The notes under the pieces: model-generated
The model's database searches: none
The model's input: only the letters and a program-made list of their open reading frames with translations
Told to the model about the DNA's origin: nothing
Translations under genes and position numbers: made by a program
Shown here: one piece after another, positions 497-60,514 of the stretch
Layout of the letters: every line of letters starts with the position of its first letter
Position numbering within the stretch: the stretch's first letter is position 1
Virus record (IMG/VR): IMGVR_UViG_3300029983_000007
Coordinates: 186,001 to 250,000 of that record
DNA: 64,000 bases
Reading direction: 5' to 3' (one strand)

Positions 497-1400
497 TCAA
501 TCAATTCTTCCATTATTTAATTTTTCTAATTTTCTTTTTCTATATCCTTGATGATCACTAAAATATTCAGAAAATAGATTGTTTTTTCTATCTGTTTCAA
601 GCCAAAATGCATACTTATCATCATCAGTATAATTTATTGATATTATAACTTCATCTGATTTGCTATCATTGTACATAGTTTTAGTAGCAGATTTTGTGTG
701 ATTAACAGTGTATATGTTATTTTCTTTGAATATTAATTTTTCATCAGATTTTCTATATACATCTTTTGTACAATAAACTTTATCTCCTGCGTTTAGTATT
801 TTTACTGACATTCTATAAATAATTTTTCTAATTTCATTTTTCTATATTCTTTTATGCTCATAAAATATTCATAATAATTCCATCCATATGCATTTTTTAG
901 ATTAAGAGTATAAAAAAACCCATTACTTTCAATTGAAACTAAACTTTCTATACCTTTCTGCTTATACACAAAATGAACAATGTATACATTGTTCATTTTC
1001 ATGACTAATGTATTATCAAAATCATAAAAATCATTTATGCAATAAACTTTATCTCCTTGCTTTGGTATTAACTTCATTGTTTCAATATATTTAATAATTT
1101 TCTTTTTCTTTTTTTACTAATCCATTTATTTCTATTAAAATCAAATACATTTTTTATAATATTGTCACTTGGATTATTTGTGACAGTTTTGCATTCTTTT
1201 AAATCAATCCAACAATGTGATATTCCATCTTCTGAAACATAACCATAAAAACCAGGTAGATAACAACGAGTATCATGATCTGGTATATCATATTCAGTAA
1301 TCAATTTAAATTCTTGAACCTTACCAATAGGTTCAACTGTTGAATTGAATGTAAAGTGAATAATATTACAATCTTTTATCCATTCTTCTATTTCTGTCAT
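497..1400 (-). CDS. three small overlapping ORFans with C-terminal RKxKL-type tail (497-811, 802-1077, 1074-1400)
   Basis: Overlapping stop/start junctions; tails GYRKRKLEKL, EYRKMKLEKL, KKRKRKLLNI; the first two start with GDKVYC like the 5.5-8.8 kb family. Confidence 0.75.
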
Positions 1401-1432
1401 ACTATATAAAGTTAATTAAAAATAATGAGATT

Positions 1433-1609
1433 TTACTCATTATTATCATTTTTTTTGTTATCTTTGTTTATTAAGTATGTAATATATTCTGATTTTGATA
1501 AATTATTTTCAATTAAATAAGTTTCTAATTTTTCATTTAACTCTTTGTCAATAGTAATACTCATCGTTGTTTTTTTATTTTCCTTTTTTGGTCTACCTAC
1601 GTCTGACAT
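1433..1609 (-). CDS. ribbon-helix-helix (CopG/Arc-like) DNA-binding protein
   Basis: Translated by hand (below ORF-track cut-off): MSDVGRPKKENKKTTMSITIDKELNEKLETYLIENNLSKSEYITYLINKD..., alternating beta strand then helix and SKSEYI helix, typical of RHH. Confidence 0.65.
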   Translation of the reverse strand: MSDVGRPKKENKKTTMSITIDKELNEKLETYLIENNLSKSEYITYLINKDNKKNDNNE

Positions 1610-1688
1610 ATTGTTTTTTATTTTTATAGTAAAATAGAAAAAAATGGTTTATTTTTATTTATATATAACAATAAAATAACAATTTAAT

Positions 1689-4968: not shown

Positions 4969-5452
4969 ATGAATGATAATAGATATTATTGTAAAAAAAA
5001 TTATTATAATAACTTCACAAAAGGATGTTATTATGATATTTGGATAGATCATAACAAGGATTCAAGTTATCTAATAAATTGGATAAATAATAATGTTTAT
5101 AATGTAAACACCATCTATGTTATATATGGATCTGAAATGGATAAAAATTTTAATAGCTATTTTATATTAGCTACTATTCATGATAGAAAAATAAAATTAA
5201 AAATATTAAATGAAGACTAAAAAATATTATTGTAAAAAATCATACGATAGCATTACTATAGGTAATTATTATGATTGTGGAACATCAACTAATGATTTAA
5301 TTTATGAAATTTCTGGAAAAAACAAAAAAGGTTTTGACTTTAATATGATATATGACAATAAATCTGATATTTATAAATATTTTAATGATTATTTAATATT
5401 AGCTATTATTCACGACAGAAAAATAAAACTAGAAAAAATTAGGTTATCTTAA
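4969..5452 (+). CDS. two paralogous small proteins with RKxKL-type tail (4969-5220, 5210-5452)
   Basis: Shared YYCKK...G.YYD...Y.ILA.IHDRKIKL. Confidence 0.75.
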
Positions 5453-5494: not shown

Positions 5495-8400
5495 ATGGAT
5501 CAAAATATTAAAATAGGTGACAAATTTTTATGTAAAATGAATTATTGTTATATAATATTACAAAAATTTCATGAAGGTGTAGAATATGAAGTATATGATA
5601 TAAAAAAAATAGACAATGGCTGCGGTTTTTATTATTATTCCTATTCAATGATAGATAATGTTGACTTTAAGTTGTTATATGTGATTGAGTATGAATTAAA
5701 TAATATATTTTACTCTGGTAAAGAAATGAGAAAAATTAAATTAGAAAAATTGAATGAAAAATCATAATATTAAAATTGGTGATAAGTTATTATGTAAAGA
5801 TGATTGTTGGATTCCTAATATATGCTATCATAAAGGTAGAGAATATGAAGTATTTGATTTAAATAATTATTCGTACGTAATAATAGATAGAATTAACAAT
5901 GAGAGATTATTTATTGATGAATCAGAATTAAATTTAGTTTTTTATACTAATCAAGAAATGAGAAAAATTAAATTAGAAAAATTAAATGAAAAAATATAAT
6001 CTTAAAATAGGTGACATATTGTTATGTAAAAAAGATTATATTTATAGTAAAATCTCTTTTAGTATAAATAAAAAATATGAAATAATTCAAATTGTTTATA
6101 ACTCGCTTGAAAATAACAATAATTCGGTTTACTATTATGTATATGACGATAATAATAGTAGCATAGAAATTAGAAATGATGAAGATATGAATAGATATTT
6201 TTACACTAACCAAGAAGTCAGAAATATGAAATTAAAAAAAATTTATGAAGAATCAGAATCTTAATATTGGTGATAAATTATTATGTAAAAATTATTTAAA
6301 AACAGAATATTCTAGTTTAATAGAAGGTGATTATTATTTATTAGTTGATTTTGAGATATTTAATCATGAAGAATATTGTGATGTTAATTATACATTTTAT
6401 GATGAATATAATTATGATGATTATGTATATTATATAGATGATAATAATCATCACTCGTTTTCAATATTAGATGAAAAAGATTTATATAAGTATTTTTATA
6501 AAAAAAATGAGATTAGAAATATGAAATTAGAGAAATTAAAAAATGTTTAAGCAGAATCTTAAAATTGGTGATAAGTTGTTATGTAAGATAGATTATTGGA
6601 CAACAAAAATTTATTTTTTTGAAGGTAGAGAATATAATATATGTGACATAGAAATTGATTATGCAGATGAGAATGATTATGCATATTTTATAATGGATGA
6701 GAATAAAAACCGTGTGTTATTTATGATATTAGATGATTTAGATTCTTTTTTTTATACTAAGAAAGAAGTTAGAAATATCAAAATAAAAAAATTGAAAAAT
6801 GCATAATATTAAATTTAAAATAGGAGAAAGAATATTATGTAAATGCATTTTGCATCAAAACTTCGAATATTTTATGTTAAATAAATATTACACAATTTAT
6901 TCAATTGAAGTGTCAACCATAGGTAATTCATATTATCATATGACATTATAAAATAGCGATTTGCAGTCTATTTGTTCAGATGAATCTGTTTATAATTATT
7001 TTTATACTAACCAAGAAGTCAGGAATATGAAATTGAAAAAATTAAATGAAGAATCAAAATCTTAATAAAGGAGATAAAATATTATGTAAGAATGATATAC
7101 ATAATTCAAGAATTAATTTTACAAAAGGAATAGAATATTATATTGTAGCTATAGAACATAAAAATGATAATTATGATGATGATGGTAGTAATTATTACTA
7201 TTATATATCTGATGATAACTCTCAAATAATAGTTAGTGAAAATGAAAGATTATTTTATAATTATTTTTATACTAACCAAGAAGTCAGGAATATGAAATTA
7301 AAAAAAATAAATGATGATAAATAATTTTAAAGTTGGTGATAAGTTATTATGTAAAAAAGATTATATTACAAAATATTCAAGGTATAAAAAAAACAAATAT
7401 TATTATATTGAAGATATTGATGATCCTGTTTATGATTATGAAGAATATTCATATTATATAAATGATGATAATAATAATAATATTTATTTTTGGAAAGAAT
7501 ATGATTTATATGAATATTTTTATACTGCACAAGATGTACGAAAGCTTAAATTGAAAAATCTTTATGAAGAATCTGAATCTTAAAGTTGGTGACAAGTTAT
7601 TATGTAAAACTAACCTTTGTTCTTTGCTAGTTAATTACTTTAATAAGGATAAATATTATATTGTTTGGGATATTAAAAATTTTAAAGATTATTCTCAGAA
7701 TTGGACTTGGACTTGGTATTATATAATTGATGAAAGAGATTGTCCTTATTCTTTTAGTAAAATGGATGATGATTTATATGATATTTTTTATACTAAAAGT
7801 GAAATTAGAAAAATGAAATTGGAAAAATTGAAAAATGAAGAATATTAAAATAGGTGATAGATTATTATGTAAAAAAAGTCTATTTAACTCATCAATGACA
7901 TATTTTTATGCGAGAGAATATTACACTATTAATGAAATTCAATCAGAGAGTGATGGAGAATATTCATATTATATAATTGATAATAATGGCTATACTATGC
8001 CTTTTTCTTTTAATAATAACACTTTATATGCATATTTTTACACTAAACAAGAAATGAGACATATGAAATTAAAAAAAATTTATGAAGAAGCAGAATCTTA
8101 AAATAGGTGATAGATTATTATGTAAAGAAAGTTTTTTTGATTCAGATGATCCATATTTTCATGTAGATGATTATTGTATTATTTATTATATTCAAAAGTA
8201 TGTTACTAATGAATATTATTATTATATTTCAGATGAAAATAATAAACGATATCCTTTTAGATTTAGTCCTGATTTATTATTAACGTATTTTTATACTAAA
8301 CAAGAAATTAGAAATATGAAATTAAAAAAATTAGAAAAATATGAATAATTTTAATGACTATGATAACATATTATGTAAAAAAGATTTAATTGCTAATGGT

Positions 8401-8836
8401 CAGATATGTTTTATAAAAGATGAGTATTACATTTATCGTGAAAATTTAGGTAATGTTATTGATTTGTTTGGATGCTGTATTTATGGTGAAACTAGTGATA
8501 GATACCCATATTATTTAACTAAAAAAGATTTACTGGGTCATTTTTATACTAAAAATGAAATTAGAAAAATTAAATTGAATAAAATTTATGAAGAAGCAGA
8601 ATCTTAACACAGAAGATATATTATTGTGTAAAAAAGACTATTTAATATATTCTGTTGTTGTGTTTCATAAAAATAAATATTATTATAATAGATTTAATAA
8701 ATCTCATGTTTGTTGTACTATATGTGATGATGATTCATTTGAACATTTGCTTAGTTATGACGAGGTATCTGAGCATTTTTACACTAAACAAGAAGTTAGG
8801 AAAATTAAATTGAAAAAATTGAATGAATGTCAGTAA
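5495..8836 (+). repeat. tandem array of 13 paralogous ~81-101 aa genes (12 intact, 1 broken)
   Basis: Starts at 5495, 5754, 5986, 6245, 6543, 6799, 7046, 7311, 7564, 7835, 8082, 8341, 8588; N-terminal (K/N)(I/V)GD(K/R)(L/I)LCK is conserved (degenerate in the last two) and so is C-terminal FY(T/S/K)xxE/DxRxxKLxK[LI]; middles are divergent; successive genes overlap. Confidence 0.9.
6799..7065 (+). pseudogene. array member with an in-frame TAA at 6949-6951
   Basis: MHNIKFKIGERILCK...YYHMTL*NSDLQSICSDESVYNYFYTNQEVRNMKLKKLNEESKS*; both family ends are in one frame. Confidence 0.85.
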
Positions 8837-9237: not shown

Positions 9238-10323
9238 ATGAAAAAAGTAAGAAGCATTTTATTTAAAATGGAATTAAAAGGCAACGGAGTTGTTAATTTT
9301 GATAGTAATGATCAAAAATATCTTTGGAATGAAAATACAAAAGGTACTGGTCAAGAAAGAGTTAATCACAATAATGTCAGCTTTGCTAAAAAACGTTGGT
9401 ATAAAAATGATGACGGTACAATTGATAAAAAATTGATTGTTTCAAGTAACTGTCTTAGGTATTCAATATTTTCTGATGATACTTTATTTCAATCACCAAA
9501 TATAATTAATAATAGTTTTTTACTAAATTCAATGATTGCCACTCCAGGTTTAATTTGTCGTGGATATATGTTTGCAGAAAAAGATCCATCAAAATCATAT
9601 AAACGATCTAGTGTATTGAATATTACAGATGCTGAACAAATAAATAATTCGATATCTACATTAGAAACTTTTAGTCGTAGTGGAGAAAAAATTGTTGATG
9701 AAAACAAATCTGACACAAGTTTCTTCAAAAAAGAAACAGTAGGTAATATTGTATATGAAGCGATAGGTAGTATTGATATGATGCAAATTCAATTTGTTAG
9801 TTGTGATCAACTATTTGATAGGATGGCATTAAATCCAGATATATTTCCAGATTATAAGAAATTTCTTTCTACTAAATTACCAAATTTCAATTCTGAACTT
9901 AGTTATTATCAAATTAAAGGTAGTGCTATTGAACTTCCTGAATATGGTTTTATGTTATCAAATGAAAATGTGATATTTTTAGTAAAGGATTTATTCACTA
10001 AAATGTTAAACTTAAAAATTCGAAAAGCATCTGCATTTGCTGAAGTTTCTTCTATCAAATATAAAATTGTTAATGATCCATTTGAAGATAAATTTAGTGA
10101 TGAAGACGGCTGGTTGGAATTGAATAAAAACGTTATTGAAACATTGAATTTTGATAATGAGGACTTCTATGAGAAATATGATTTTGATGCTGCTAAATCT
10201 TTAAGATTAGAATTAGAAGATGCTGCAAAAGCCAGAAAAGATGCTAATAAAGATGCTGCAAATTTAAAAAAAGAAGAAGCAAAATCTAAAAAAGAAAAAA
10301 AAGTAGAAGAAACTGAAGAATAA
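9238..10323 (+). CDS. cas7: CRISPR-associated Cas7-like backbone protein (divergent)
   Basis: N-terminal strand-G..N, VSSNCLRY (ISxxxlR-like), RGY...KRSS.L.ITDA, then ETFSR...DTSFF..E..G..Y...G.ID, the Cas7 RAMP pattern; first gene of an operon with cas6 beside an array; charged helical C-tail. Confidence 0.75.
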   Translation: MKKVRSILFKMELKGNGVVNFDSNDQKYLWNENTKGTGQERVNHNNVSFAKKRWYKNDDGTIDKKLIVSSNCLRYSIFSDDTLFQSPNIINNSFLLNSMIATPGLICRGYMFAEKDPSKSYKRSSVLNITDAEQINNSISTLETFSRSGEKIVDENKSDTSFFKKETVGNIVYEAIGSIDMMQIQFVSCDQLFDRMALNPDIFPDYKKFLSTKLPNFNSELSYYQIKGSAIELPEYGFMLSNENVIFLVKDLFTKMLNLKIRKASAFAEVSSIKYKIVNDPFEDKFSDEDGWLELNKNVIETLNFDNEDFYEKYDFDAAKSLRLELEDAAKARKDANKDAANLKKEEAKSKKEKKVEETEE

Positions 10324-10334
10324 TAAAAAATAGC

Positions 10335-11210
10335 ATGAAATATTTAAAGTTAAGTTTCAGAAATGCTGGCTTCTATACTGTTAATAAAAATACTAAAGAC
10401 TTTATGTTTGATATAAATGGTCAGCACAAAAGAAAAGATGTATTATATGGTAAACAGCAAAAAGTTAGTATTTCTGTTAATCAGATAAGTAATATGTTAC
10501 ATGTTTTAATGGGCGAAAGACCAAGTGCAACATATCGTGATACTTTAATAAATCCGATAAATTCTATTTTTCAAACTGCTAATAAATCATACATTAAGAT
10601 TTATACCTCATTTTTTATAAATAAAAATAAAAATGTGAAATATTATCCTTCTGAAAGTGTTACTATTAGAAAATCAGTTTGGAATAGTTTTAATCCTGCA
10701 CCAGATTTAGTTTATTGGAAAAGAGTTGAGAATTTTTTAACTAATGATATAGATAATTCATTATATCTTGAATTTGTAAAAATATTAAATTCTATATTAG
10801 AATATGATGTATTAAAAAAAACATTTTTAGATGTTATTGATGAATTGATAAAAAATCATAAAAATCATAGTTTAATTAACACTTTTAAATTAAAACTTAA
10901 AGAATCAATGAAAGTTCCAATGATTAAAATATTGGATGGTGAATATGATGGCACTATGAATAAAAATAGTAGAACAATGTTGACTACTAATTTTGGTGTT
11001 GATAAGATTACTAGATTGAGTGGTTCTATTATAATACCAGTTGAAGAATATGATATTGAAAAAATTAGGAATTCAAAAGGTTCTGTTACTTTATTAGACG
11101 GTGGAGTAGTGTGGATTGAAGATTTGATAAATGATTATGAATTTGGAGTTAGAGAACTTGAAGAATATTTACCTATTAATAAATTAGAAGAATATGAGAA
11201 TAATATTTGA
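10335..11210 (+). CDS. cas5: Cas5-like protein with large central helical insertion
   Basis: N-terminal MKYLKLSFRNAGFY...QISNMLHVLMGERP resembles the Cas5 first strand and 'sal.Gll.ailG' helix; C-terminal LSGSIIIP...VTLLDGG.V.I resembles the Cas5 RRM end; lies between cas7 and cas6. Confidence 0.55.
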   Translation: MKYLKLSFRNAGFYTVNKNTKDFMFDINGQHKRKDVLYGKQQKVSISVNQISNMLHVLMGERPSATYRDTLINPINSIFQTANKSYIKIYTSFFINKNKNVKYYPSESVTIRKSVWNSFNPAPDLVYWKRVENFLTNDIDNSLYLEFVKILNSILEYDVLKKTFLDVIDELIKNHKNHSLINTFKLKLKESMKVPMIKILDGEYDGTMNKNSRTMLTTNFGVDKITRLSGSIIIPVEEYDIEKIRNSKGSVTLLDGGVVWIEDLINDYEFGVRELEEYLPINKLEEYENNI

Positions 11211-11907
11211 ATTTACAGAAAATACATCATTAGTACCAATTAATAATCAGTCATATATGAATTATTATATTCAAAAATGTCTTGGCGACAATAATAAATA
11301 TCATGATTCTAAGAATGATTATTCTATTTCTTCATTATATGGAGGTAAGTTAACAGATGATGAATTACATTTATCTTTCAAAAATGGAGGCATTATTGTT
11401 GTAACTTCAAAAAATGAAGAATTCTTGAATACTTTGATATGTGGTGTGATGTCTAATAAAGAATTAAAATGGGGAATGAAATTTGATAAAATTAATTTCA
11501 TTTCTGAAATTTTTAGAAATGGCTGGAATCATTTTGCTACATTATCTCCTTTTATTATTAAAAAATATATTGATAAAAAGAATTATACCTTTTCAACTTT
11601 GAATGATTCTGATTTTGTAGATACTGTAAAAAAACATATTATAAAAAAATTGAGTAAAATTTATAATGGTATAAATTTAACAGATTTTGATGTTAAAATA
11701 ATCAATCATCCTTCTCATAAAGTAAAAAAAATAATGGTGAAGAATGTTAAAAATGAAGCTAATCAATGTCAAGTCAGTATATTCTGTTCATCAGATGTAG
11801 CAGAAAAAATTTACAATTTAGGTATAGGTCAATCAACTGGTTCAGGATTTGGAACAATTTATAAAACAGAAAATAGAGATAAATATAATTTAGAATTGAA
11901 AAAATGA
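11194..11907 (+). CDS. cas6: CRISPR-associated endoribonuclease Cas6
   Basis: YHD..N.YSIS.L.GG, TLSPFII, C-terminal Gly-rich loop GIGQSTGSGFGTI. Confidence 0.95.
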   Translation: MRIIFEFTENTSLVPINNQSYMNYYIQKCLGDNNKYHDSKNDYSISSLYGGKLTDDELHLSFKNGGIIVVTSKNEEFLNTLICGVMSNKELKWGMKFDKINFISEIFRNGWNHFATLSPFIIKKYIDKKNYTFSTLNDSDFVDTVKKHIIKKLSKIYNGINLTDFDVKIINHPSHKVKKIMVKNVKNEANQCQVSIFCSSDVAEKIYNLGIGQSTGSGFGTIYKTENRDKYNLELKK

Positions 11908-11999
11908 TTAATTTTAATCTAAATGATATTGTTACAAGTGATTTTTTAAATTATAAATCACTTGTAATGTTATGTATATCTGTCAATTATGAATAATGA
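11908..11999 (+). promoter_or_regulatory. CRISPR leader with a 13-bp inverted repeat
   Basis: AT-rich non-coding stretch next to the first perfect repeat; TTACAAGTGATTT (11932-11944) / AAATCACTTGTAA (11955-11967). Confidence 0.65.
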
Positions 12000-13222: not shown

Positions 13223-13234
13223 TATTAAAAATTA

Positions 13235-13266: not shown

Positions 13267-13290
13267 CATGTTATAAAAAATTATTAAAAT

Positions 13291-19308: not shown

Positions 19309-19677
19309 ATGGTGCTTGGTAAATTATATCGTAAAGATTTAAATAAAAATGAAAAACAAGTTTATGATCATGTTAAAAAATTGAGACACGGTGAACTTGT
19401 TGGATTCACAATAGGTAATAAAAATGGTGATGATTCTTTTATTTGGAAACTAAATTTTAATGGAATAGAAAAATGTGAATTATATGGCAAATCACTCTAT
19501 GATAATAAACAATATTCTTTTAAATTTGTAACTGAATATGATGGTTACACAAGTAAATTGTCTAATTTTGATTATATGCTAATATATGTAATGAATTGGT
19601 ATTATAATTGTATTGATGAATATTTGATAATATCTTCACGTAGGAAAAAATTAATTCAAATTAATAACAAACTATAA
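19309..19677 (+). CDS. hypothetical protein with RKxKL-type tail
   Basis: C-terminal SRRKKLIQI. Confidence 0.6.
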   Translation: MVLGKLYRKDLNKNEKQVYDHVKKLRHGELVGFTIGNKNGDDSFIWKLNFNGIEKCELYGKSLYDNKQYSFKFVTEYDGYTSKLSNFDYMLIYVMNWYYNCIDEYLIISSRRKKLIQINNKL

Positions 19678-20574: not shown

Positions 20575-20829
20575 TTAATATTCTAAATCATTAGAGTTTA
20601 ATTTGTCAATTTTGTCTTTTCTATCTTTTAATAAGAAATATTTATTCTCATCTACAAATAATCTACAAGATATACTATCATTAACTATATCATTAAAATA
20701 TGGACTATTTAAATTGTCACATGTTGTGTGAGTACTCTCATTATTATTAAATTCTTTACATAAATCATCTAGTAATATTGAAGTGTGTGAGTATTTTGAA
20801 TACATACAGTTTAAGCAGTTATCATTCAT
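20575..20829 (-). CDS. small Cys-rich protein with RKxKL-type tail
   Basis: CLNC...C...C...SC; tail DRKDKIDKL. Confidence 0.6.
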   Translation of the reverse strand: MNDNCLNCMYSKYSHTSILLDDLCKEFNNNESTHTTCDNLNSPYFNDIVNDSISCRLFVDENKYFLLKDRKDKIDKLNSNDLEY

Positions 20830-26642: not shown

Positions 26643-26834
26643 TTGAATTTTATTTATATTAGAATAAAAAATATAATGCGTAAAAAAGTGTCTGATGAAA
26701 ATAAAAGAAAGCATGTTTCATTCTCAATTGATCCAGAAGTTTATGAATTATGGAAGAAATATTGTGAAGATAATGATATTGAGAATTATTCTGAATATAT
26801 TGAGAAAATTATAGTTGAAAAAATGAAAAAATGA
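26643..26834 (+). CDS. ribbon-helix-helix DNA-binding protein
   Basis: ENKRKHVSFSIDPEVYELWKKYCEDNDIENYSEYIEKII; similar to 1433-1609; real start is probably the ATG near 26677. Confidence 0.65.
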   Translation: MNFIYIRIKNIMRKKVSDENKRKHVSFSIDPEVYELWKKYCEDNDIENYSEYIEKIIVEKMKK

Positions 26835-27109
26835 AAATAGAAGAATTAAAAATTAACCAAACAATAAAATACAAAAAAGAAATACCAGATGTTTTATCAA
26901 TAGATAAAGAATATATTATTACATATAGTAGTTATCTTGGTACTGATATTGTGTCTATTAATAGGAAAAAACGAAAATCTATGAATATTATTGCAATAAA
27001 ATGTGATGATGACGAAATTCATGATTTTTTTCAGAATGAATTTGAAGAATATTTTTATACTGAAAAAGATTATAGGAAAGAGAAAATAATTAAATTGAAT
27101 TATATTTAA
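26831..27109 (+). CDS. small protein with RKxKL-type tail
   Basis: YFYTEKDYRKEKIIKL. Confidence 0.65.
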   Translation: MKIEELKINQTIKYKKEIPDVLSIDKEYIITYSSYLGTDIVSINRKKRKSMNIIAIKCDDDEIHDFFQNEFEEYFYTEKDYRKEKIIKLNYI

Positions 27110-32251: not shown

Positions 32252-35200
32252 TTAAATTTTTATGTTGTATATTTCAAGTATAGTTTTTATGTCAAGTTTG
32301 AGAAATTCCTCAAAATCTTTTTCTATGACATCATATTTTTTGCATTTAGTTGTTAAAGATTTATATATGTTTGTAACTATTTTATCTGAATTTTGAGTTT
32401 TGTTGATATCAGATAATGATTTTGATAATCCTTCTAAGAAGATAACAAGTTTTTCTTTTTCTGAATATTGTGTAAATTTTCTAATATTTCCAGTTTCAAT
32501 TTGAATTCCATTAATATTATCTAATTTTAATTTTCTTTGCTCACTTATAGAAATCTCATCAAATTGATATGAATACATATTTTTATTTATTCCTCTTAAT
32601 TTTAGATAGTGATAATCAAATGTATATCCTCTTTGACGTTTCTTAAATTGCAATTCTACATAATAAATTGCTCCTTCTTTTGTTTGAATTGAGCTACTGC
32701 GATTACATCTAACATATTGTCCAGTATAGTCTATATTATCAGTATCTAATGTTTTTGATTTTACTATGAAAGTATCATGTACATACAAATAATCACCATT
32801 TTCTAATTTAAAATTAATAGCTGAATAATATGTTAAGCCTTTTATTAAAACTCGTTTTTCTTTATTTGTACTTGCTCCAGTATCATATAATTCAATAGCA
32901 TAATATTCTCCACCTTTTATTAATTTTATTGAACTTTTTGGGTATACACAAATAACTTTCAATGGTGATTTTAATATTGTAGTGTGGTCCATTTATTATT
33001 TTTATTTATGTTTTAATCCAAATGTTATACCTATCTGCATTCCAGATAAATATGATTTTATCATTTCATTTGTATTATTACCTTGAGTAGAATATCTAAG
33101 ATCATTGTCAATTAATACTATTCCAGTATTACCTGTAATTATTACATTTATTGACGGTATTATATTTTTGATATCACGTATCATGAATTCAATATCTATA
33201 TTTAGTAGCATAATTTTTAGAATATGATATTATATATGTTTGTTAATAATAATATATCTGGAATTTTGTAAAATAACAAATTTATTATTATTATAGTTAA
33301 AATTGGAATTGAAAAAAATGAGTCAAAAAATATAAATGCTTTTATAAAAATTTTATTTTTTATGTATTTGAATACAATAGTTTTTATAAATGACATACAT
33401 ATTAACACTAAAAATAAATTTGAATTTATTGTAAATAAGCCAATAAGTGTTAATAATGTATAGATAATATCTATTAGTGTCATTTTAGAAAAAAATAATA
33501 ATATATTAGAATTCAGTTTTTTAGTAATATTTTTACCATAATAAACTGATATCATATTAATTCTATAAAACATTTTAAATTTTATACTTTTGTGAATTTC
33601 AAATGAAAGACACATTCCTATCAGCAATATAAATATTAAATTAATCATAAATTTTTTCCTCTATATGGTTCAATACTTGGTCCTGTACTAAATCCCCGTT
33701 CTAATATTGTACCCATGTACTTGTATTCTTCATTTTTGCTCATGTCGTTGAAATCTTTTTCTGATGCGCACCATACTAAGGTGTCTCCGTATAAAAATAG
33801 ATAGTAATTCATATTATTTATTTATTAATTAATTTGTTAATTTATTAATTTTTTGCTTTCTTATATCCTTTATATCATCTAATATGACTTCAACTGAGTC
33901 ATCCATTGATGATTTTGAAATAGATGAGTCAACAGTGTAATTACTTTTGTCCTTTTGAGCTTTCCAAAATTCATGTCTTATGACTTGTATGATATCATAC
34001 GCTTCTCTGCATGTTTCATCAACTTGTTTACTGTGAATACCAAAATATGCACTATAAAAAGTACTATCACCAGTAATTAAATATTTTATTTCACTTAATC
34101 TAGTTTTTATTTCTCTTGTTCTATCATGAAGTTTTGCCCAATCTGGAGATAATTTCAAATTTTTGACATCTTTCCATTTTTTTACTTCATTACCATTACC
34201 CCAACTACCTTCTGTTTTTATATAACTTTTACCAATCTCTACAATTTTTCCTCTCATTGTTTCATCACCAACTTCAAGTTGTTTTTTATCTGTAAATTGT
34301 TCAGTTATAGAATTATCAATTGTTGGATGATTTAAAACTTCATCTAATTGAAGCATTCCAATTCTCGAATATAAATCAAGAGATTTTTGAATTAATCTTA
34401 GTTGTTTGTTTGATAATTTTATGATTGCCATTAGTTATTTGATGTATACTAAGTATGTAATTGTTTTGTCTTTGTAAGGTGAGACTTGAAAACGAAATCT
34501 ACTGTCATCGTTTTTATCTTTCTCTGTGATGTACATATAATGTTCAGAGTTCATGTTAGTCCAATCATCAAATTGTTCTTTTGTATCAAATTCTGGTTCC
34601 ATGCCACCATGAAATTCATCAGAAATAGCTTCTTTAATAGCAATAAAACAATCATCAGGAATAGGATTTGACTTATCAACGCCTGATTTGTCTAATATAG
34701 TACCGATAACTCCTACCATTTGATTAAAGTAAAGATATTTACATTTTGATAATTCATCTAGTGCAATAGCACTAACTTTTTGATAACTTACTTTCATGAT
34801 TTTAATAATTTATGAATAATGAATAAACTGTTTTATTTCCTATTTCTTCTTTATAATCTTCTATGAATTTTTCAACCCAATATTGAAAAGTTGTAACATC
34901 TTTTTCTCCTAATTCAATTAATGGATAAGCTATTGGAGTTTCAAACATATCTGAATGTCTATAATCTTTTTCCATGTCACAAACGTCATCCCAATCCCAT
35001 CCAGAATTTTGAGATACATAGTCTATTAATATAGAGTTATCAATGCATAAATCAAATTCAAAATTTATTTTCATGATACTAAATATTTATTATTGTAAAT
35101 AGTTTCAATATCAATACATTTTATTTTTATAAATGATTTAATTCTATCTATTCTTCCTGATGAAACTTCTGTTTGGTTAGATATGTTAAATAGAATATAA

Positions 35201-39536: not shown

Positions 39537-40560
39537 TCAATTATTATCATTTTTTTTATATTTATCAGGATTACGTTTTTTATCATTAATAATGAAAGAT
39601 GATATTTTATATACTTCTGATATAATATTTTTATTACCTGGTAATTTTAAATATTTAATCTTTACTTTATTATCTGGATTTAAAATCTCATCTTCAATTA
39701 ATTCCATTGCAATTGATAAACAAAAAATATGAAGATCTCTAATATCTTCATTTTCTTTTTCATATTTACAAGCATAATCATAACTTATTGGCTCAGAAAC
39801 ATCAATATTATTAATCTTGTTGAGTTTACATTTTCTGATTAATTTGTTAGATGAACTTATTTTATTAATAGTTACTTTCATATTCTGTTGAGTTTAATTC
39901 TCCAATTTTCAACATCCTGATTAACAAATTTGAATCTTTAAATGAGTGTGTAGAATATCTAACTCTTTTGTTAATAAATGTTTTGTTAGATGTAAAATAA
40001 GATATACCAGAGCAACTAACATTAATTTTACTACCACATTTTTTATTCATTGAGAATACACCAGGTGTTTTTATATAATTAATTTCTGGTTTTGATAAAA
40101 TACATTTTTTATATAATGTATAGTTTTCACTCCTGAATTTTTGCTGCCATACAATATAAATTTCATCTTCATTAAAATTTATATTATCTAAAAAAGATTC
40201 TAGTTCTGTGCTAGATGTAATGATCAAATCAAATCCTTTTTCAGTTTGATTAACCATTTTGAAGATGTCTTTATCTTTTTGATTGATTGTTATAAATTTT
40301 TTCATTATTATATGTTTTAAAATTTAATGCAAAGATAATACATTTTTTTAAATACACAAAATAATAATATATTTTTATTTGGATAATATTGGAGTGTTCA
40401 ATAAAGCATATGATAGTGTAATGACAAATAATATAGTTATAATTATCAATCCAGATATTTTATATGCTGCTGATTTATTACCAAGTTTAATGTTGAATAA
40501 AACTAAAATCATCATTATTACTAAATATAGAATGTTTGTTATAAATATAAATGAATTCAT
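39537..40560 (-). CDS. three small hypothetical genes (39537-39881, 39865-40305, 40375-40560 membrane protein)
   Basis: ORF track; minus-strand promoter TTTG-N19-TATCTTTG at 40330-40360 precedes 40305. Confidence 0.6.
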
Positions 40561-52851: not shown

Positions 52852-53509
52852 TATGAAAATAGATTTTAATATAAACGAAAAAAATTCTATAACAATAACA
52901 GTTATAGAATTATCAAACAACAGAAAACGCATTTCAGTGCCATTGGATACTTTAAGTCGTAAAAAAACAAAAATGGCTATAGATATATTAAGAAATATTG
53001 ATAATAATTGGCTAAATAAACAAATTTATATTAAAAAACGTGAAAATCGTAAAAATAAATTAACTGAAATATGGAAAATATGATACCAAATAAAAATGGA
53101 AGAATTTATCCTAAAGAATTATTTGAAAAATACTTAGATGAATATAATAGAACTATATTTAAGCAATTAATAAAATCAGAAAGAAAAACTAAATTAAAAA
53201 AAATAGAAAATGTACAATTCAGAAATGACTGAATGGGATAATATAAAAGAATTCGTTAATTTACATATTAAATTTACTAGAAGAGATTTATATGTTTATG
53301 GATTTTCTAGAACAGGAGAGCAATATATTTTACTTTTGAAGCATGTTGGATTTGTAAATAAAGTAGATATTGCTAAATATGAGAGATTGTGTAAAATTCC
53401 TGATACATTATCATCAACTAAAATATCTAATTTGGTAAAAAACAAATATAATTGTGTAAAATATATTAGAAAAATTAAATTAATAAATATTAAAACTCTT
53501 TACGATTAA
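52820..53509 (+). CDS. three small RKxKL-tailed proteins (52820-53083, 53080-53232, 53210-53509)
   Basis: Tails ENRKNKLTEI, ERKTKLKKI, YIRKIKLINI; 53080-53232 translated by hand: MIPNKNGRIYPKELFEKYLDEY... Confidence 0.65.
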
Positions 53510-54941: not shown

Positions 54942-56078
54942 ATGTGGATAAAAATTAATGATGTACCTTTACATATGAGTTTAATCATAAACATTAGTAA
55001 AATTGAAAAAATAAATAGTGATAATATTAATCAATTCTTTGATAGATTTCGTACATTTGATTTATCAAATGTACGTCATAGAAATAGTATTGATATTGTT
55101 GAACGTGGGTTTAAATTAGAACGTGTATATAATCATTCTAAACAAAACAGTATAGGTGAGCTATGTCATTATGAAAAAGGTAATTTTCCTGGTGAAATTA
55201 TTATAAAAGAATCAAATTTTAAAATGAATAGTGACAAATATTTATTTGAAGTTAATTATAAAAAAATGAATGATGATGAAATATATAAAATATCATCAGA
55301 AATATATGACACATTTGAAGATGCAGAAAAAACACAAGACTTTTTATTATCAAAAATGAACGATATTGAAATGTCAGTAAGTAATATTAAAATATAATAA
55401 TATAAAAATGTGGATAAAAATTAATGGATTACCAATACAAGTCAGTTCAATTAAAAACATAAGTAAAATTGAACAAATATCAGAAGATATGATAATTAAA
55501 TACTATAATAAAAGTTCAAGAAACAGGTTTTATAGTTCAGATGATATTAGTGAAAGCAGTAAAATTCAATATGTTAATAAATATATTACGTCAAATAACA
55601 AATCAACTGGAAACGTAATTAATTATTTAAAAAAAGAAGATGGTTCAGATGATTATGACCATATTATAAAATCCACATTTAAATTGAATTGTGACATATT
55701 TATATTTTATATTTGTGCAGAAGAAATATCATATTCTGAAGGTAAATGTAATTTATTTAATAATAATATTTATTCAAAAATTTTTGATACAATTGAAGAA
55801 GCGCAAGTTGTTCACAATAACTTATTGACAAAATTAAATGAAATTGAAATGTCACTTGTCAATATTGAAATATAAAAATGAATTATAATGATATTTATAA
55901 GATTCCAAATATATCTGAGCTAGATAATTTAGCATATAGATTATATTGGAATGATAATCGTACATGTTTTGAAGGAAATGTAAATTTTTTAAAAAACCGT
56001 ATTAAATATATTAAATATTATGACTCAGCAAATCTATATTTAAGGAAAGAAAAAATAAAAAAACTCAGTAAGATTTGA
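54942..56078 (+). CDS. paralog pair MWIKIN... (54942-55397, 55408-55875) plus a small RKxKL-tailed ORF (55878-56078)
   Basis: Shared MWIKIN..P...S.I.NISKIE.I and S.I.DT.E.A......LL.K.N.IEMS..NI.I. Confidence 0.75.
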
Positions 56079-56935: not shown

Positions 56936-57189
56936 TTGTTGTTAGATTTGTTGTTAGTTTTTGATGATGTGCACTTATTAGTTTTTGATGATGTATTAAC
57001 ATTTAAACTTTTAATTATTAATAATTTACTTCTTCTTTCTTTTTTCAAAAAAGAATCTTTAATTGCTTTTGATGTTTTAACTGATGCGATAATATAAGAC
57101 TAGTCATTGGATACTATCATTCTATTTTCTTCCAAATATGAATCACTATATATGATAATCCCTTGTAAAGTAAAATATTTATTCAGCAT
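56932..57189 (-). pseudogene. RKxKL-family gene with an in-frame TAG (57100-57102)
   Basis: MLNKYFTLQG...VSND*SYIIASVK...KKERRSKLLIIK...NK*; start and stop overlap the neighbouring genes. Confidence 0.6.
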
Positions 57190-60100
57190 TGTATTTTAGT
57201 ATTTCTATTATTTTATTATTTCTTTGTTCTTTAATGTTTATAAAATATTTATCAATATCACATTTAAGCCAAATTGAACATTCTTTTTTTATTGTTTTTT
57301 GTTTTTCATCAAATGTAGAAACTGTATCATTATTTAAGTGTTCTATTACGTTTTTAATTTTGTTATTTTCTATATAATAATATTTTTCTTTAATATAAAA
57401 TATTTTATATTTTTCATTAAAAGTATATTTTTCTGATGTAAAATGATTACTCATATTAATATCCTTCACTAAAATCAAAATATCTCCAATTTTATACATT
57501 TTAATTTTTAATTAAAAATAAATCAAATTTACTTGCTACTTCTTTTAATCTATTATTAATGTCTTCAACTACATCATCATACTTATCAATAGTATTTTTA
57601 TTATCCATAAAATACACTTCCCAAAGCCAACCTCTTAGCTCTTGTAAATCACTAAAAGTTTCTATTAATTCTGATGCTTTAATAGGGTCATCTGAATATA
57701 ATTTTATAAGTAATTCAGAATAAGGCTCTATGCAAACAACTGAACTTATTTCTATATAATTATCTTTTTTATATACTTCTATATCAACTATAGATATTTT
57801 TTTATATTTTAATCTAAAATTCATTTTATAATTTTTTATTTTAATATTTTCCATTTATTTATTTTATTTAGTCTAGTTAATTTATTTAAACGTATAATTT
57901 TATCAGTATATCTATATTCACAATTATAATCCCAATTAGTATATGCTAAAAAAATTCCCAAGAAATGAATATTTAAGTCAAAACAGGTGTCTTCCTTACG
58001 TCCTTTCTTTGCTCCATTTGTACTACAATGAAAAAGTTTCCAGTGTTTTTTGTGATAACTTATTGATATTGATTTGCTACAATATCGTTTCTTACCATTA
58101 ATTTTTTTATTAAACCAGATTGTCATTTTATGTCATTAGTTTTCTTTGATAATTACTTAAATATTTTTCATTTGTGTGAGGATCACCATATTTGTCAATT
58201 GGAATTTTTTGTTATAATCCTTTCCAACTATTTCCAACTGTAAAATTTCTAACTGTTAATAGATTATTTTTGCTTAATGCAGTGAAGAAATCTCTTGAGT
58301 GAGCATTATATACAGTTTGTCCTACAAAAACTTGTGCTTGATTTTATAAAATAATTATCCATTTAATTTTATTATTTTTTTCTTTCTAGTAATTTTTTTA
58401 AGTAATTCTATCTCATCTAAAAATAATTTATCTGGATTATTTATATCATCACTATAAGTAACAATTTTTTCGTCATTAAGATATATACATTTAAATATAT
58501 ATGGACCGTTATTACCTTGAAGATAATTTATTTCTAGTCTTAAAATATCCTTTGTGTATGTTGTAATATCATACTCAAATAAATCTTTCTTCTTAATTAA
58601 CAAATGATTATATTTTTTACCAATAATAACAATTTTGTTATTATATTCTATACAGCAATAATTTTCACGCTTTTTTATTCTGTTTGAATTTATGTAAACG
58701 CCAAAAGTGTAACCAGAACCATTTAAAATATAAGATTCATAGATATAATATTCTTTATTTTCTATTATAATTGAATATTCATTTTCGATAAATTCAAGTT
58801 TAAATTCACTCTTCATATAATTTGTTTAATTTTCTCAATTTGAATTTTCTGATTTTATTTTTATATTTTGGATCATATTTTTCCCAATGAGAATAAAATT
58901 TATTTAATAGTATATTTAAATCAATTTTATCTCCATTCTTTTTTTGATGGTAATACATTAATATTATAGATGATATATCATCAGGATGATCTATAAAATA
59001 ATTATCAATAAACCAGTTTTTCAATTCGCTTTTTTCTTCCCATAATTTAAAATTATTTCTTACCCACATACCTAACCCCATATGTGAAATTGATATTGAC
59101 TCTTCTTCATTTGTTTTTAGCCAATCTTTTTTTCCAACAATGTCTAAATTGTCAATAATTTTATATGTTTCTTCTAAGTTATTTGGAATTTCAAATTTGA
59201 TCATTTATACTATAGTTTATTTTTTTGATTTTTTCTCTTCTATAATCTGATAGACTTTGTGTGTGTAGTGTGAGATATTGAGATTCTACAGTAGAACCAA
59301 TTGGAACAATTGTATAATGAAATGTATATTTTGTTTCTATTGGAGTTTCAATTTTATCAAATACAATATTTTTTTGTTCATCTACGAATACAAAACAATG
59401 CACACCAACACCATCATTATGAATTTGATTTGTACGTCCTAATATAACACAATCCTCTTTTAATGAATTATCTATTTCGTATTTAACTCGATTAAGATCA
59501 TAGATATATTTGTATAAAAAATTTTTAGTTTTAGAATTTGATACATAAAAATTAGGTGGTCCAATTCTGCCTGCCACTGCTATGTAGCTACCTGCTGCTG
59601 TGATTCTACTACAAATATTATTTTTTATTTTTTTTGGTTTATCAGAATAGGATTCTTGACTATATTTTTTATCAATTTCTTCTAATATAATATCATAAAT
59701 ATCAATTTTTTTAATATCATTTTTTAAATTTTCTCTGTTTTTGTTACCTAATTCTAAAATAATAGGTATAAATTTACTTCTCATTTCATTGTTTATAATA
59801 GATTTAATATGTATAGTTAATTGTTCATCTGTATATATATTATTAGTAATAGTGAAGTTAAATTTGTTAAGATTTATATTTTTACTACACATATTAACAG
59901 CAAATGTATTTGGATATATAGATTCATTGATTGCTCCCATTGTTGAACTTGATGGAGTTGTCATATTTGAAAAATTTGTGTCCAGATAACTAATCTGTGG
60001 CATTAAACTATTAACTGGAAATATTGTGAACATATCATTCTCTAATTCTGATAAATTAATTTTTTTATTCATTCTGATTTATTATTTTTTTCAATTTAAA

Positions 60101-60514
60101 TTTTCTTAATTTACTAGGATTAAAAAATTTTTGTAAATATTCTGCATATGCTACTATACTCAATAAATATTCTTCTTTATTATAAATAATATTATTTATA
60201 TACAAAATTGAGTCATTATATTCTTTTTCAGAGAATTTTTCAAAGTTACATTTTTTTAAATGTTCAAAATTTTCAGTATATTTTTCTAATTGATTAATAG
60301 TTTCCATGTTATATTTTTTTTGTTCTTTTGCTATTGATAATAAATATTCAGAGTAACTTATAGTATTTTTGTCTCCTATCATTATAATAGTTTTAAAAAA
60401 AATAATCATATTATAATATTCTAAATAAGATAAACCATATCTTGTAATAAAAAAATTATCATTCATTATAACTGCATATTTTTCTAATTGTTTACTGATT
60501 TTATTATTTTTCAT
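57179..60514 (-). CDS. operon of mostly RKxKL-tailed genes (57179, 57501, 57836, 58355, 58806, 59191, 60065)
   Basis: Tails EQRNNKIIEI, IIRLNKLTRL, ITRKKKIIKL, KIRKFKLRKL, YRREKIKKI, KLRKFKLKKI; 58806-59204 has HMGLGMWVRNNFKLW..HPDDISSII (DUF6794-like from memory). Confidence 0.7.
59191..60072 (-). CDS. degenerate T4 gp23/gp24-like (HK97-fold) capsid-protein-related protein
   Basis: RITAAGSYIAVAGRIGPPNFYVSN resembles the gp23 'EA..IA..T.RG.GNFIIAS' segment; IFPVNSLMPQISY resembles VQPM.GP.G.IF. Confidence 0.35.
   Translation of the reverse strand: MNKKINLSELENDMFTIFPVNSLMPQISYLDTNFSNMTTPSSSTMGAINESIYPNTFAVNMCSKNINLNKFNFTITNNIYTDEQLTIHIKSIINNEMRSKFIPIILELGNKNRENLKNDIKKIDIYDIILEEIDKKYSQESYSDKPKKIKNNICSRITAAGSYIAVAGRIGPPNFYVSNSKTKNFLYKYIYDLNRVKYEIDNSLKEDCVILGRTNQIHNDGVGVHCFVFVDEQKNIVFDKIETPIETKYTFHYTIVPIGSTVESQYLTLHTQSLSDYRREKIKKINYSINDQI

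What the first reader, a model, noticed from the sequence alone, without database searches (positions are those of the whole stretch)
497..60514. A C-terminal R-x-x-K-[LI]-x-x-[LI] tag on more than 30 otherwise unrelated small proteins
Seen: the motif ends proteins at 497, 802, 1074, 4969, 5210, all 13 array members, 19309, 20575, 26831, 33829, 52820, 53080, 53210, 55878, 57179, 57836, 58355, 58806, 59191 and 60065. Codons vary (AGA/AGG/CGA/CGT; TTA/TTG/CTT), which indicates protein-level selection. It is never combined with the KFN tail. Inference: an amphipathic basic helix acting as a shared docking, localisation or degradation signal, so that diverse cargo domains plug into one hub such as RNAP, the ribosome, membrane, DNA or a phage compartment.
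Basis: partly seen in the sequence, partly recalled or inferred. Interest (0 to 1): 0.72.

Follow-up and report, generated by a model that had tools for sequence, protein, structure and literature searches.

The report
Shared C-terminal helix tag on phage proteins
About one protein in six of this very large peat-soil phage ends in the same short basic helix (R-K-x-K-L-x-K-L), attached to otherwise different small proteins and strictly kept in related phages; it looks like a shared docking label whose partner is still unknown.

Summary
In the window, 33 of 116 ORFs carry R..K[LI]..[LI] in their last 20 residues (0.5 expected from shuffled tails). In the 330-kb contig it is 92 of 563 (2.2 expected), 55 times the internal rate. 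The full consensus is [LI]-R-K-x-K-L-x-K-[LI]-N. R and K are not interchangeable and the spacing is fixed.

Selection acts on the protein. Codon use at tag positions equals genome usage. Codons drift synonymously between homologues while the residues stay. About 31 tagged genes have no downstream start nearby.

"Otherwise unrelated" is half right. About 30 of the 92 belong to one SH3-like superfamily. The other 62 are diverse, including Tad3, DUF6794 and eight different PHROGs.

The tag is kept in 53 of 53 and 13 of 13 homologues in two related phage contigs. It covers 70-80% of ORFs on two unrelated metagenomic contigs. It is absent from the nearest GenBank huge phages (1 of 528 ORFs in LR756501) and from 185,579 bacterial and archaeal species genomes. 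It never co-occurs with the KFN tail.

Best reading: a modular, helical C-terminal docking motif for one common partner. The partner and the purpose are not identified. No curated family or paper found here describes it.

The parts
497..811 (-). tagged ORF, 104 aa, SH3-like superfamily
   Evidence: tag RKRKLEKL at 518-541, 6 residues follow
802..1077 (-). tagged ORF, 91 aa, SH3-like superfamily
   Evidence: tag RKMKLEKL at 820-843
1074..1400 (-). tagged ORF, 108 aa, body not in the superfamily
   Evidence: tag RKRKLLNI at 1086-1109; the homologue in L016 keeps the tag
4969..5220 (+). tagged ORF, 83 aa
   Evidence: tag RKIKLKIL at 5185-5208
5210..5452 (+). tagged ORF, 80 aa
   Evidence: tag RKIKLEKI at 5417-5440
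5495..6806 (+). first five members of the tandem array (5495-5767, 5754-5999, 5986-6264, 6245-6550, 6543-6806): SH3-like barrel plus tag helix
   Evidence: tags at 5729-5752, 5961-5984, 6220-6243, 6515-6538, 6771-6794; alignment A1; AF2 model of 5495-5767 has a barrel at 1-64 and the tag helix at 75-89
6799..7049 (+). 13th array member, interrupted by an in-frame TAA at 6949-6951
   Evidence: the same frame continues to ...YFYTNQEVRNMKLKKLNE; tag remnant at 7022-7045, AGG codon for R
7046..8836 (+). last seven members of the tandem array (7046-7324, 7311-7583, 7564-7848, 7835-8101, 8082-8348, 8341-8607, 8588-8836)
   Evidence: tags at 7286-7309, 7539-7562, 7807-7830, 8057-8080, 8310-8333, 8563-8586, 8798-8821
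19309..19677 (+). tagged ORF, 122 aa
   Evidence: tag RRKKLIQI at 19639-19662
20575..20829 (-). tagged ORF, 84 aa, convergent downstream neighbour
   Evidence: tag RKDKIDKL at 20599-20622
   Evidence: tag RIIKLTRL at 22798-22821
26831..27109 (+). tagged ORF, 92 aa, distant array relative, convergent neighbour
   Evidence: tag RKEKIIKL at 27074-27097, preceded by YFYT
33829..34431 (-). tagged ORF, 200 aa
   Evidence: tag RKQKINKL at 33838-33861
39865..40305 (-). regex hit, 146 aa; probably chance
   Evidence: RMLKIGEL at 39895-39918, lacks K at positions 1 and 6; not among the listed matches of the tag model (which leaves 109 matches unlisted)
52853..53083 (+). tagged ORF, 76 aa from the first ATG (87 aa from TTG at 52820)
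   Evidence: tag RKNKLTEI at 53048-53071
53071..53232 (+). tagged ORF, 53 aa
   Evidence: tag RKTKLKKI at 53182-53205
53210..53509 (+). tagged ORF, 99 aa
   Evidence: tag RKIKLINI at 53468-53491
55878..56078 (+). tagged ORF, 66 aa, convergent neighbour
   Evidence: tag RKEKIKKL at 56043-56066
57179..57499 (-). tagged ORF, 106 aa
   Evidence: tag RNNKIIEI at 57200-57223
57836..58126 (-). tagged ORF, 96 aa
   Evidence: tag RLNKLTRL at 57869-57892
58355..58816 (-). tagged ORF, 153 aa
   Evidence: tag RKKKIIKL at 58364-58387
58806..59204 (-). DUF6794 domain (aa 6-88) plus a 44-aa extension ending in the tag
   Evidence: PF20594 match 1e-19 at G000 244941-245189; tag RKFKLRKL at 58827-58850; five homologues keep it; all-alpha AF2 model with the tag region at pLDDT below 50
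59191..60072 (-). tagged ORF, 293 aa, the longest tagged protein
   Evidence: tag RREKIKKI at 59218-59241
60065..60514 (-). tagged ORF, 149 aa
   Evidence: tag RKFKLKKI at 60083-60106

Best explanation
The tag is a modular piece of protein about 12-16 residues long, [LI]-R-K-x-K-L-x-K-[LI]-N-x-[IL]. It forms a short amphipathic helix close to the C-terminus of many small accessory proteins of a clade of roughly 700-kb peat phages. It most likely works as a docking motif: the conserved face (Arg 0, Lys 3, Leu 4, Leu/Ile 7, flanked by Lys 1, Lys 6 and Asn 8) fits one common partner, and the variable N-terminal body supplies the individual function.

Shown: the enrichment, the C-terminal position, the strict residue identity and spacing, protein-level purifying selection, the presence on different folds and families, retention in homologues, and restriction to this clade.

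Inferred: that the helix binds a shared partner rather than acting by itself. Neither the partner (phage or host protein) nor the outcome (recruitment, localisation, packaging or turnover) is known.
For: 1. Enrichment. 92 of 563 ORFs are tagged against 2.2 in shuffled tails, and the C-terminal rate is 55 times the internal rate. The window alone has 33 against 0.5. A related AT-rich huge phage serves as a negative control, with 1 of 528 ORFs.

2. Specific recognition rather than general charge. R..K occurs 92 times. K..K occurs 22 times, though most of these are read as hits inside the same tags, which was not counted. This is despite Lys being four times commoner than Arg. R..R occurs 0 times. 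V, M or F at the Leu positions occur at most twice, and shifted spacings 2-10 times. Positions the regex does not require are also conserved: K1 in 66 of 92, K6 in 55, N8 in 41. At 100 degrees per residue the variable positions 2, 5 and 9 fall in one arc of about 80 degrees and the conserved ones fill the rest (geometry applied).

3. Protein-level selection. Codon use at the tag equals genome usage. In 53 homologue pairs with G001, R0, L4 and L7 show 13, 13 and 17 synonymous codon changes, while positions 2, 5 and 8 show 22-33 amino-acid changes.

4. Not a signal for the next gene. 12 tagged genes have a convergent neighbour and 19 have no start within 40 nt. The distance from the tag to the next ATG ranges from -1 to 439 nt with no fixed spacing. 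Asn at +8 coincides with an overlapping ATG in only 10 of 41 cases.

5. Modularity. With the tag trimmed, the bodies form 72 BLAST components, 63 of them singletons. They include Tad3 (matches PDB 9b7d over aa 3-167 of 194, tag beyond that), DUF6794 (aa 6-88 of 132), ResIII and eight different PHROGs. In phrog_2164 the match ends at aa 129 and the tag starts at aa 146. An SH3-like all-beta model contrasts with an all-alpha model. Foldseek matches to SH3 domains mostly end by residue 75 and leave the tag helix outside, although several AlphaFold DB hits run to residue 88-90.

6. Retention. The best homologues are tagged in 53 of 53 cases (median identity 51%) and 13 of 13 (37%), with no switch to the KFN tail. 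The tag model finds 84, 86, 66 and 23 matches in four related records and only 0-2 weak ones in five other large phages.

7. Spread. A profile of the array family finds 1040 cluster representatives, and 143 of the best 150 are tagged. On two metagenomic contigs, 49 of 62 and 42 of 59 ORFs are tagged, including Cys-rich bodies.
Against: - No partner was found.
- The only complex prediction (SH3-tag protein against DUF6794-tag protein) returned 'no answer' and counts neither way.
- About a third of the tagged proteins are one superfamily in which the helix is an integral part of the family. Part of the signal is therefore common descent.
- The 62 'diverse' bodies are small, fast-evolving ORFans, so very distant homology cannot be excluded.
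- The confident helix comes from one model. In the DUF6794 model the tag region has pLDDT below 50.
- There are no expression or proteomic data; no RNA run was listed.
Confidence: 0.5

Rival explanations
1. Common descent only. All tagged proteins are remnants of one enormously expanded and diverged paralogue family, and the C-terminal helix is simply its best conserved element, for example a structural cap or a self-association helix. There is no shared external partner.
For: - Iterative HMM search on tag-trimmed bodies joins 19 R-tagged proteins, and an N-terminal GDxxxC-type pattern brings the total to about 30 of 92.
- The family is huge in metagenomes and nearly always tagged.
- Members lie in tandem arrays that expand by duplication.
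- An SH3-like barrel followed by a C-terminal helix is a known architecture (Sso7d, chromo-like; from my own knowledge, with Foldseek leads).
Against: - Complete, independent domains (Tad3, DUF6794) and eight different PHROGs carry the tag beyond their homologous regions.
- An all-alpha model contrasts with an all-beta model.
- Tagged proteins range from 53 to 293 aa.
- A purely structural or self-associating helix would be expected to drift, not to keep R, K, K, L, K, L, N identical across bodies.
Confidence: 0.2
2. A generic basic amphipathic helix that binds membrane phospholipid or nucleic acid rather than a specific protein. It would act as a membrane-targeting sequence, or as a tail that keeps the proteins on DNA or RNA (including co-packaging with DNA).
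For: - The tag has a net charge of about +4 with three or four aliphatic residues in a helical pattern.
- It is C-terminal, like the MinD and FtsA membrane-targeting helices (my own knowledge).
- The small SH3-like, Lys-rich bodies resemble chromatin proteins of the Sso7d type (my own knowledge; Foldseek SH3 hits).
Against: - Arg and Lys are not interchangeable and neither are the spacings, which generic electrostatic binding would tolerate.
- An invariant Arg sits in the middle of the apolar face (geometry applied).
- There are no aromatic or bulky residues within the core.
- Asn at +8 is conserved.
Confidence: 0.12
3. A processing or turnover signal. The tag would be recognised by a protease or unfoldase, either as a degron that limits the life of accessory proteins or as a cleavage or packaging signal used during head assembly. 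This is a special case of docking in which the partner is proteolytic machinery.
For: - The tag is C-terminal, basic and hydrophobic, like the MuA-type ClpX signal and the SspB tethering tail (my own knowledge).
- A ClpP-like gene lies in the related contig G002 at 130534-131052, E 3.7e-55.
- The tagged set consists of small accessory proteins, including an anti-defence homologue, Tad3.
Against: - One to twelve variable residues follow the tag, so it is not at the extreme C-terminus as known ClpX and tail-specific protease signals are.
- No S41 protease was found in the three contigs, although they are fragments.
- ClpP-like genes in phages are often head-maturation proteases.
- No proteomic evidence exists.
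Confidence: 0.1
4. A nucleic-acid-level element that happens to be translated. It would be a translation-initiation, coupling or promoter signal for the next gene, or a recombination site for shuffling gene cassettes.
For: - In 53 of 92 cases the next start codon lies within 15 nt of the tag, often overlapping the tail.
- The A-rich tag RNA would suit initiation without a Shine-Dalgarno sequence.
- In arrays the post-tag tail is the out-of-frame N-terminus of the next gene.
Against: - Synonymous codons vary at genome-wide rates while the residues stay fixed.
- Leu and Ile interchange through different codons.
- 31 tagged genes have no start within 40 nt or face a convergent gene.
- There is no fixed spacing to the next ATG.
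- The strict motif occurs 47 times in six frames, 45 of them within 12 codons of a stop.
Confidence: 0.03

Closest known systems
C-terminal helical docking motifs, for example MIM1 of ESCRT-III proteins binding MIT domains (my own knowledge)
   Same: A short amphipathic helix at or near the C-terminus with Leu at i and i+3/4 and basic residues. One conserved face. Shared by several proteins that converge on one partner.
   Different: The MIM1 consensus is (D/E)xxLxxRLxxL(K/R), not RKxKLxKL. MIM1 belongs to one protein family in eukaryotes and archaea. No MIT-domain partner was sought or found here.
Adaptor and effector families with a constant C-terminal recruiting element: poxvirus ankyrin proteins with a PRANC/F-box, the SspB tail that tethers to ClpX, and the positively charged C-terminal signals of type IV secretion substrates (my own knowledge)
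   Same: A variable N-terminal body plus a constant C-terminal element on many proteins of one genome. Basic character. Large, fast-evolving gene sets.
   Different: There is no sequence resemblance. PRANC is a domain of about 40 residues, the SspB tail is at the extreme C-terminus, and type IV signals are loose charge patterns. Here the motif is strict, 1-12 residues follow it, and no machinery has been identified.
Capsid-targeting sequence of phage T4 internal proteins (my own knowledge)
   Same: A short peptide shared by unrelated small phage proteins, some of them anti-defence, that routes them to one destination.
   Different: The T4 signal is N-terminal, about 10 residues long and removed by the head protease. 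It marks a handful of proteins, not 16-25% of the ORFs. There are no virion data here.
The KFN[IL] tail family in the same genome
   Same: A second terminal signature on small proteins in the same gene-dense arrays. It is conserved in the same relatives, under protein-level constraint and mutually exclusive with this tag.
   Different: KFN[IL] is the exact C-terminus and comes with a conserved N-terminus, MKY[IL]KxFE. Its genes mostly follow a TATATAWA upstream motif (80 of 102), and none follow TATCTTTG.

Membership tests
Any curated protein family covering the tag (Pfam-A, PHROGs) | A significant profile match that includes the C-terminal motif | tested here: not met
   Pfam on 92 and 129 tagged proteins gives only Tad3, DUF6794, ResIII and two marginal hits, none covering the tag. 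PHROGs gives eight single-member hits of unknown function. Genes on L065-L067 have almost no precomputed Pfam hit, only 4HBT and a weak Hydrolase_6.
MIM1 / MIT-interacting motif | Consensus (D/E)xxLxxRLxxL(K/R) in a C-terminal helix | tested here: not met
   The position profile shows R-K-x-K-L-x-K-[LI]-N, with no RLxxL core and no leading acidic residue.
MIM1 / MIT-interacting motif | An MIT-domain partner encoded by the phage or host | not tested
   No search for MIT domains was run. The contig is about 46% of the genome and the host is unknown.
ClpX-type C-terminal degron or SspB-like tethering tail | The signal lies at the extreme C-terminus | tested here: not met
   One to twelve residues (mode 3-6) follow the motif, and they vary.
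ClpX-type C-terminal degron or SspB-like tethering tail | A cognate Clp machine is present | tested here: inconclusive
   A ClpP-like ORF is found in G002 only. G000 and G001 are fragments. ClpX was not searched.
Membrane-targeting amphipathic helix (MinD or FtsA type) | An amphipathic helix whose function tolerates Lys/Arg exchange and depends on bulky apolar residues | tested here: not met
   R at 0 and K at 3 are not interchangeable, and only L or I is accepted at positions 4 and 7. Actual membrane binding cannot be tested with these tools.
T4-type capsid-targeting sequence | An N-terminal position followed by a head-protease cleavage site | tested here: not met
   The motif is C-terminal in 92 of the 110 occurrences.
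T4-type capsid-targeting sequence | The tagged proteins are present in virions | not testable with these tools
   No proteome data exist for this uncultured phage.
SH3-like / chromo-like barrel with a C-terminal helix (array family only) | A five- or six-stranded barrel matching SH3-like folds | tested here: inconclusive
   The AF2 model has pLDDT 86. Foldseek finds SH3 domains at probability 0.97-1.0, but with E 0.04-0.2 and TM 0.35-0.68.
Translation-initiation or coupling element for the downstream gene | Fixed spacing to the next start codon, and presence only where a downstream gene follows | tested here: not met
   Distances range from -1 to 439 nt. There are 12 convergent neighbours and 19 genes with no start within 40 nt.

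The most novel reading that the evidence does not exclude
These roughly 700-kb peat phages run a proteome-wide address system. Two mutually exclusive terminal labels, the R-K-x-K-L-x-K-L helix and the KFN[IL] end, mark a third or more of all ORFs. They would route two pools of small, fast-evolving accessory proteins to different phage-specified destinations or machines, for example virion cargo for injection versus an intracellular assembly or a protease. This would be a protein-sorting code of a kind not described for any bacteriophage.
Probability: 0.2. Interest if true: 0.9.

Novelty: new variant of a known kind. Interest (0 to 1): 0.77.

Why it matters
Huge phages carry hundreds of small genes of unknown function, and nothing organises them at present. 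A strict C-terminal label on 16-25% of the ORFs, and on more than 1000 protein clusters in metagenomes, sorts a large part of that dark matter into one functional class. It also gives an experimental handle: one peptide should identify the partner for all of them. If the partner is a host or phage hub, the tagged proteins form a natural library of variable binding domains wired to one output. If it is a packaging or degradation machine, this would be a new sorting signal in phage biology. The strict tag also marks this phage clade in metagenomes.

Tried and rejected
- **Complex prediction.** The SH3-like tagged protein against the DUF6794 tagged protein, to test tag-tag or tag-SH3 association, gave 'no answer'. 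It counts neither way.
- **Pfam, PHROGs and PADLOC scans** of tagged proteins found no family that covers the tag.
- **ESM Atlas search** with the tag region alone gave only unnamed clusters below the trust level.
- **tblastn of an array member** against 50,697 GenBank phage records found no match. BLAST's low-complexity filter may mask the tag.
- **Scan of 185,579 species genomes** for the array family found none.
- **RNA sequencing runs.** None was listed, so expression could not be examined and read laying was not used.
- **Phylogenetic profiling for a hub.** G002 shares almost no untagged genes with G000, apart from homing endonucleases and a 794-aa pentapeptide-repeat protein. The contigs are too fragmentary.
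- **hhalign of the R-tag SH3-like bodies against the largest KFN family** gave probability 5.5%. Homology of the two body sets is not supported.
- **Literature.** 'megaphage' with 'C-terminal motif' gave 0 papers, and none of the 9 listed of the 11 'Mahaphage' papers addresses such a tag by title or abstract start.
- **RBS, promoter or recombination-site reading.** Rejected on codon, context and spacing evidence.

Full report
**Where the window lies.** The window is bases 186001-250000 of a 330,208-bp IMG/VR virus record. The record has 24% G+C and is 90% coding under the standard bacterial code. CheckV rates it 46% complete. One of its proteins is found letter for letter on a 711,471-bp contig. 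Many peat metagenomes hold the DNA.

The closest GenBank relatives of a 1059-aa protein are the 634-735-kb uncultured huge phages LR745206 and LR756501-4, at about 36% identity. Lak phages, Sphingomonas phage PAU and Tenacibaculum phages follow. A 13-fold enriched upstream motif, TATCTTTG, lies about 25 nt before start codons. It fits the Bacteroidota -7 promoter consensus TAnnTTTG, which I know from memory, and so hints at a Bacteroidota host.

**Checking the observation.** I called ORFs mechanically and kept a greedy non-overlapping set.
- In the window, 33 of 116 ORFs have R..K[LI]..[LI] in the last 20 residues. Shuffling each tail gives 0.5 on average and never more than 4.
- In the whole contig, 92 of 563 are tagged, against 2.2 expected and at most 8.
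- The motif is 55 times more frequent near the C-terminus than inside proteins. Internal hits are only slightly above chance, 18 against 7.2.
Its coordinates are the lower ORF boundaries.
- The array has 12 intact members. A 13th is broken by an in-frame TAA at 6949-6951 but still encodes the tag.
- As a negative control, the first 400 kb of the related huge phage LR756501 (32% G+C) has 1 tagged ORF in 528 and no dominant C-terminal motif at all.

**Anatomy of the tag.** Aligned on the Arg, the consensus is [LI]-R-K-x-K-L-x-K-[LI]-N-[KN]-[IL], and 1-12 residues follow it, mostly 3-6. This holds in the 62 proteins outside the main superfamily.

The motif is strict.
- R..K occurs 92 times. K..K occurs 22 times, and I read most of those as hits inside the same tags, without counting them. 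Lys is four times commoner than Arg.
- R..R occurs 0 times.
- Val, Met or Phe at the Leu positions occur at most twice.
- Altered spacings occur 2-10 times.

On a helical wheel the variable positions 2, 5 and 9 fall in one narrow arc, and the conserved residues, with Arg 0 among the leucines, fill the rest. That is my inference from the profile.

An AlphaFold2 model of the array member at 5495-5767 (pLDDT 86) shows a six-stranded barrel at residues 10-64, a short helix, and the tag as helix 75-89. Foldseek matches SH3-like domains, mostly ending by residue 75, although several AlphaFold DB hits run to residue 88-90.

**Protein or nucleic acid.**
- Codon use at the tag positions mirrors the genome. 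Arg is AGA 78, AGG 6, CGT 5 and CGA 3, and the Leu codons occur in genome proportions.
- In 53 homologue pairs with the related contig G001, R0, L4 and L7 have 13, 13 and 17 synonymous codon changes while the residue is kept. Positions 2, 5 and 8 have 22-33 amino-acid changes.
- Twelve tagged genes face a convergent neighbour, and 19 more have no downstream start within 40 nt. The distance to the next ATG has no fixed value.
- Asn +8 is explained by an overlapping ATG in only 10 of 41 cases.

Selection therefore acts on the peptide. In arrays, the few residues after the tag are simply the out-of-frame reading of the next gene's N-terminus, MK..GD.

**Are the bodies unrelated?** Partly.
- With the tag region trimmed, BLASTP gives 72 components for 92 proteins, 63 of them singletons.
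- Iterative HMM searches join 19 into the array's SH3-like superfamily, and an N-terminal GDxxxC-type pattern raises this to about 30. In the window that is 16 of 33.
- In that superfamily the tag is an integral part. A profile finds 1040 cluster representatives among 1.84 billion proteins, and 143 of the best 150 carry the strict tag.
- The remaining 62 proteins, 53-293 aa, are diverse. One is a Tad3 homologue (anti-Thoeris; PDB 9b7d aligns to residues 3-167 of 194, with the tag beyond).
- One is a full DUF6794 domain, residues 6-88 of 132, with a 44-residue extension that ends in the tag and is kept in five homologues. One has a ResIII match.
- Eight hit eight different PHROGs. In phrog_2164 the match ends 17 residues before the tag.
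- The DUF6794 protein models as all-alpha, with low confidence, and its tag region has pLDDT below 50. That contrasts with the all-beta array member.

**Conservation and spread.**
- IMG/VR holds two related lineages. One is syntenic (helicase 88% identical) and the other distant.
- Read in full, G001 has 105 R-tagged and 75 KFN-tailed ORFs of 416, and G002 has 73 and 41 of 388. No ORF has both.
- The best homologue of every tagged protein that has one is itself tagged: 53 of 53 at a median 51% identity and 13 of 13 at 37%. There is no switch between the two tails.
- A 19-position model of the tag finds 84, 86, 66 and 23 matches in the four related records. It finds 0-2 weak ones in LR756501, LR756500, Lak-A2, PAU and PTm5.
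- Two distant family members lie on metagenomic contigs with 25% and 30% G+C, where 49 of 62 and 42 of 59 ORFs are tagged, including Cys-rich bodies.
- No relative was found in GenBank phages or in 185,579 species genomes.

**How it most likely works.** The evidence fits a modular helical docking motif: strict residue identity, one variable face, position near but not at the C-terminus, appearance on different folds, and perfect retention. I give this 0.5.

I cannot name the partner. The single complex prediction gave no answer, and the contigs are too fragmentary for profiling. The rivals are:
- common descent with a self-contained helix (0.2);
- generic membrane or nucleic-acid binding, disfavoured by the Arg/Lys strictness (0.12);
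- a degron or processing signal, a special case of docking. A ClpP-like gene exists in G002, but the tag is not at the extreme end (0.1);
- a nucleic-acid-level element (0.03).

**Comparison with what is known.** No Pfam or PHROG family covers the tag, and my literature searches found no description. It works like known C-terminal docking or sorting peptides, such as MIM1, the SspB tail, PRANC, type IV secretion signals and the T4 capsid-targeting sequence. It fails the defining sequence or position features of each, so it is not a member of any.

I rate it a new variant of a known kind (a short linear docking or sorting motif). Its scale, a sixth to a quarter of a phage's ORFs, is to my knowledge without precedent in phages. 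The mutually exclusive KFN label makes it more unusual still.

Noticed in passing
window 20843-22036, 27166-27980, 30062-30935, 37396-38578, 41903-46485, 61174-63771, and genome-wide: The KFN[IL] tail is the exact C-terminus of 102 of 563 ORFs. It comes with a conserved N-terminus, MKY[IL]KxFE, around highly variable middles that include ankyrin and LRR-like proteins. The genes mostly sit in arrays with ATGA stop-start overlaps. The tail also occurs at convergent gene ends and is kept in relatives (75 ORFs in G001, 41 in G002).
   Followed up: partly
window 9238-15564: A phage-encoded CRISPR-Cas locus. Cas7fv-like gene at 9238-10323 (E 7e-24), two unassigned genes, an array of about 18 identical 36-nt repeats with 29-30-nt spacers at 12000-13190, and a Cas3fv-like HD helicase at 13291-15564 (E 1e-61). 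The tagged array lies directly upstream.
   Followed up: partly
window 31514-31848: Four tandem tRNA-Gln genes, three with anticodon TTG and one with CTG.
   Followed up: no
G000 intergenic regions: There are two upstream motifs. TATCTTTG occurs in 26 regions, is 13-fold enriched, lies about 25 nt before the ATG and fits the Bacteroidota -7 box TAnnTTTG. TATATAWA occurs in 79 regions. 80 of the 102 KFN genes lie in runs behind TATATAWA and none behind TATCTTTG. R-tagged genes follow both (15 and 24). The two tag classes may therefore be transcribed differently.
   Followed up: partly
G000 92930-93514 (outside the window; L027:16930-17511): A Tad3 (type I Thoeris inhibitor) homologue, Pfam E 3e-34 and PDB 9b7d E 6e-24. 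It carries a weak form of the tag (IRLQKLKAL) at its end. It is the only tagged protein with a known function.
   Followed up: partly
window 6799-7049: One array member is interrupted by an in-frame TAA at 6949-6951. The downstream part, including the tag, is otherwise intact.
   Followed up: yes
window array 5495-8836; L065: The residues after the tag (NEKS, YEESES, NENRR and similar) are the +1-frame reading of the next gene's N-terminus (MKN.., MKIGD..). Adjacent genes overlap by 8-23 nt, so the tail itself is probably not selected.
   Followed up: partly
G002 130534-131052 (L059): A ClpP-like ORF of 252 aa, E 3.7e-55, in the distant tag-bearing relative. It could be a head-maturation protease or a true Clp subunit.
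   Followed up: no
window 46620-46982: An ORF ending in Thr-rich repeats (TTTTTTTVAP units).
   Followed up: no
G000 22003-23529, 32349-33935 and about 7 more: Many copies of a homing/HNH endonuclease family (phrog_3339, E 1e-105). These are the main untagged genes shared with G001 and G002.
   Followed up: no
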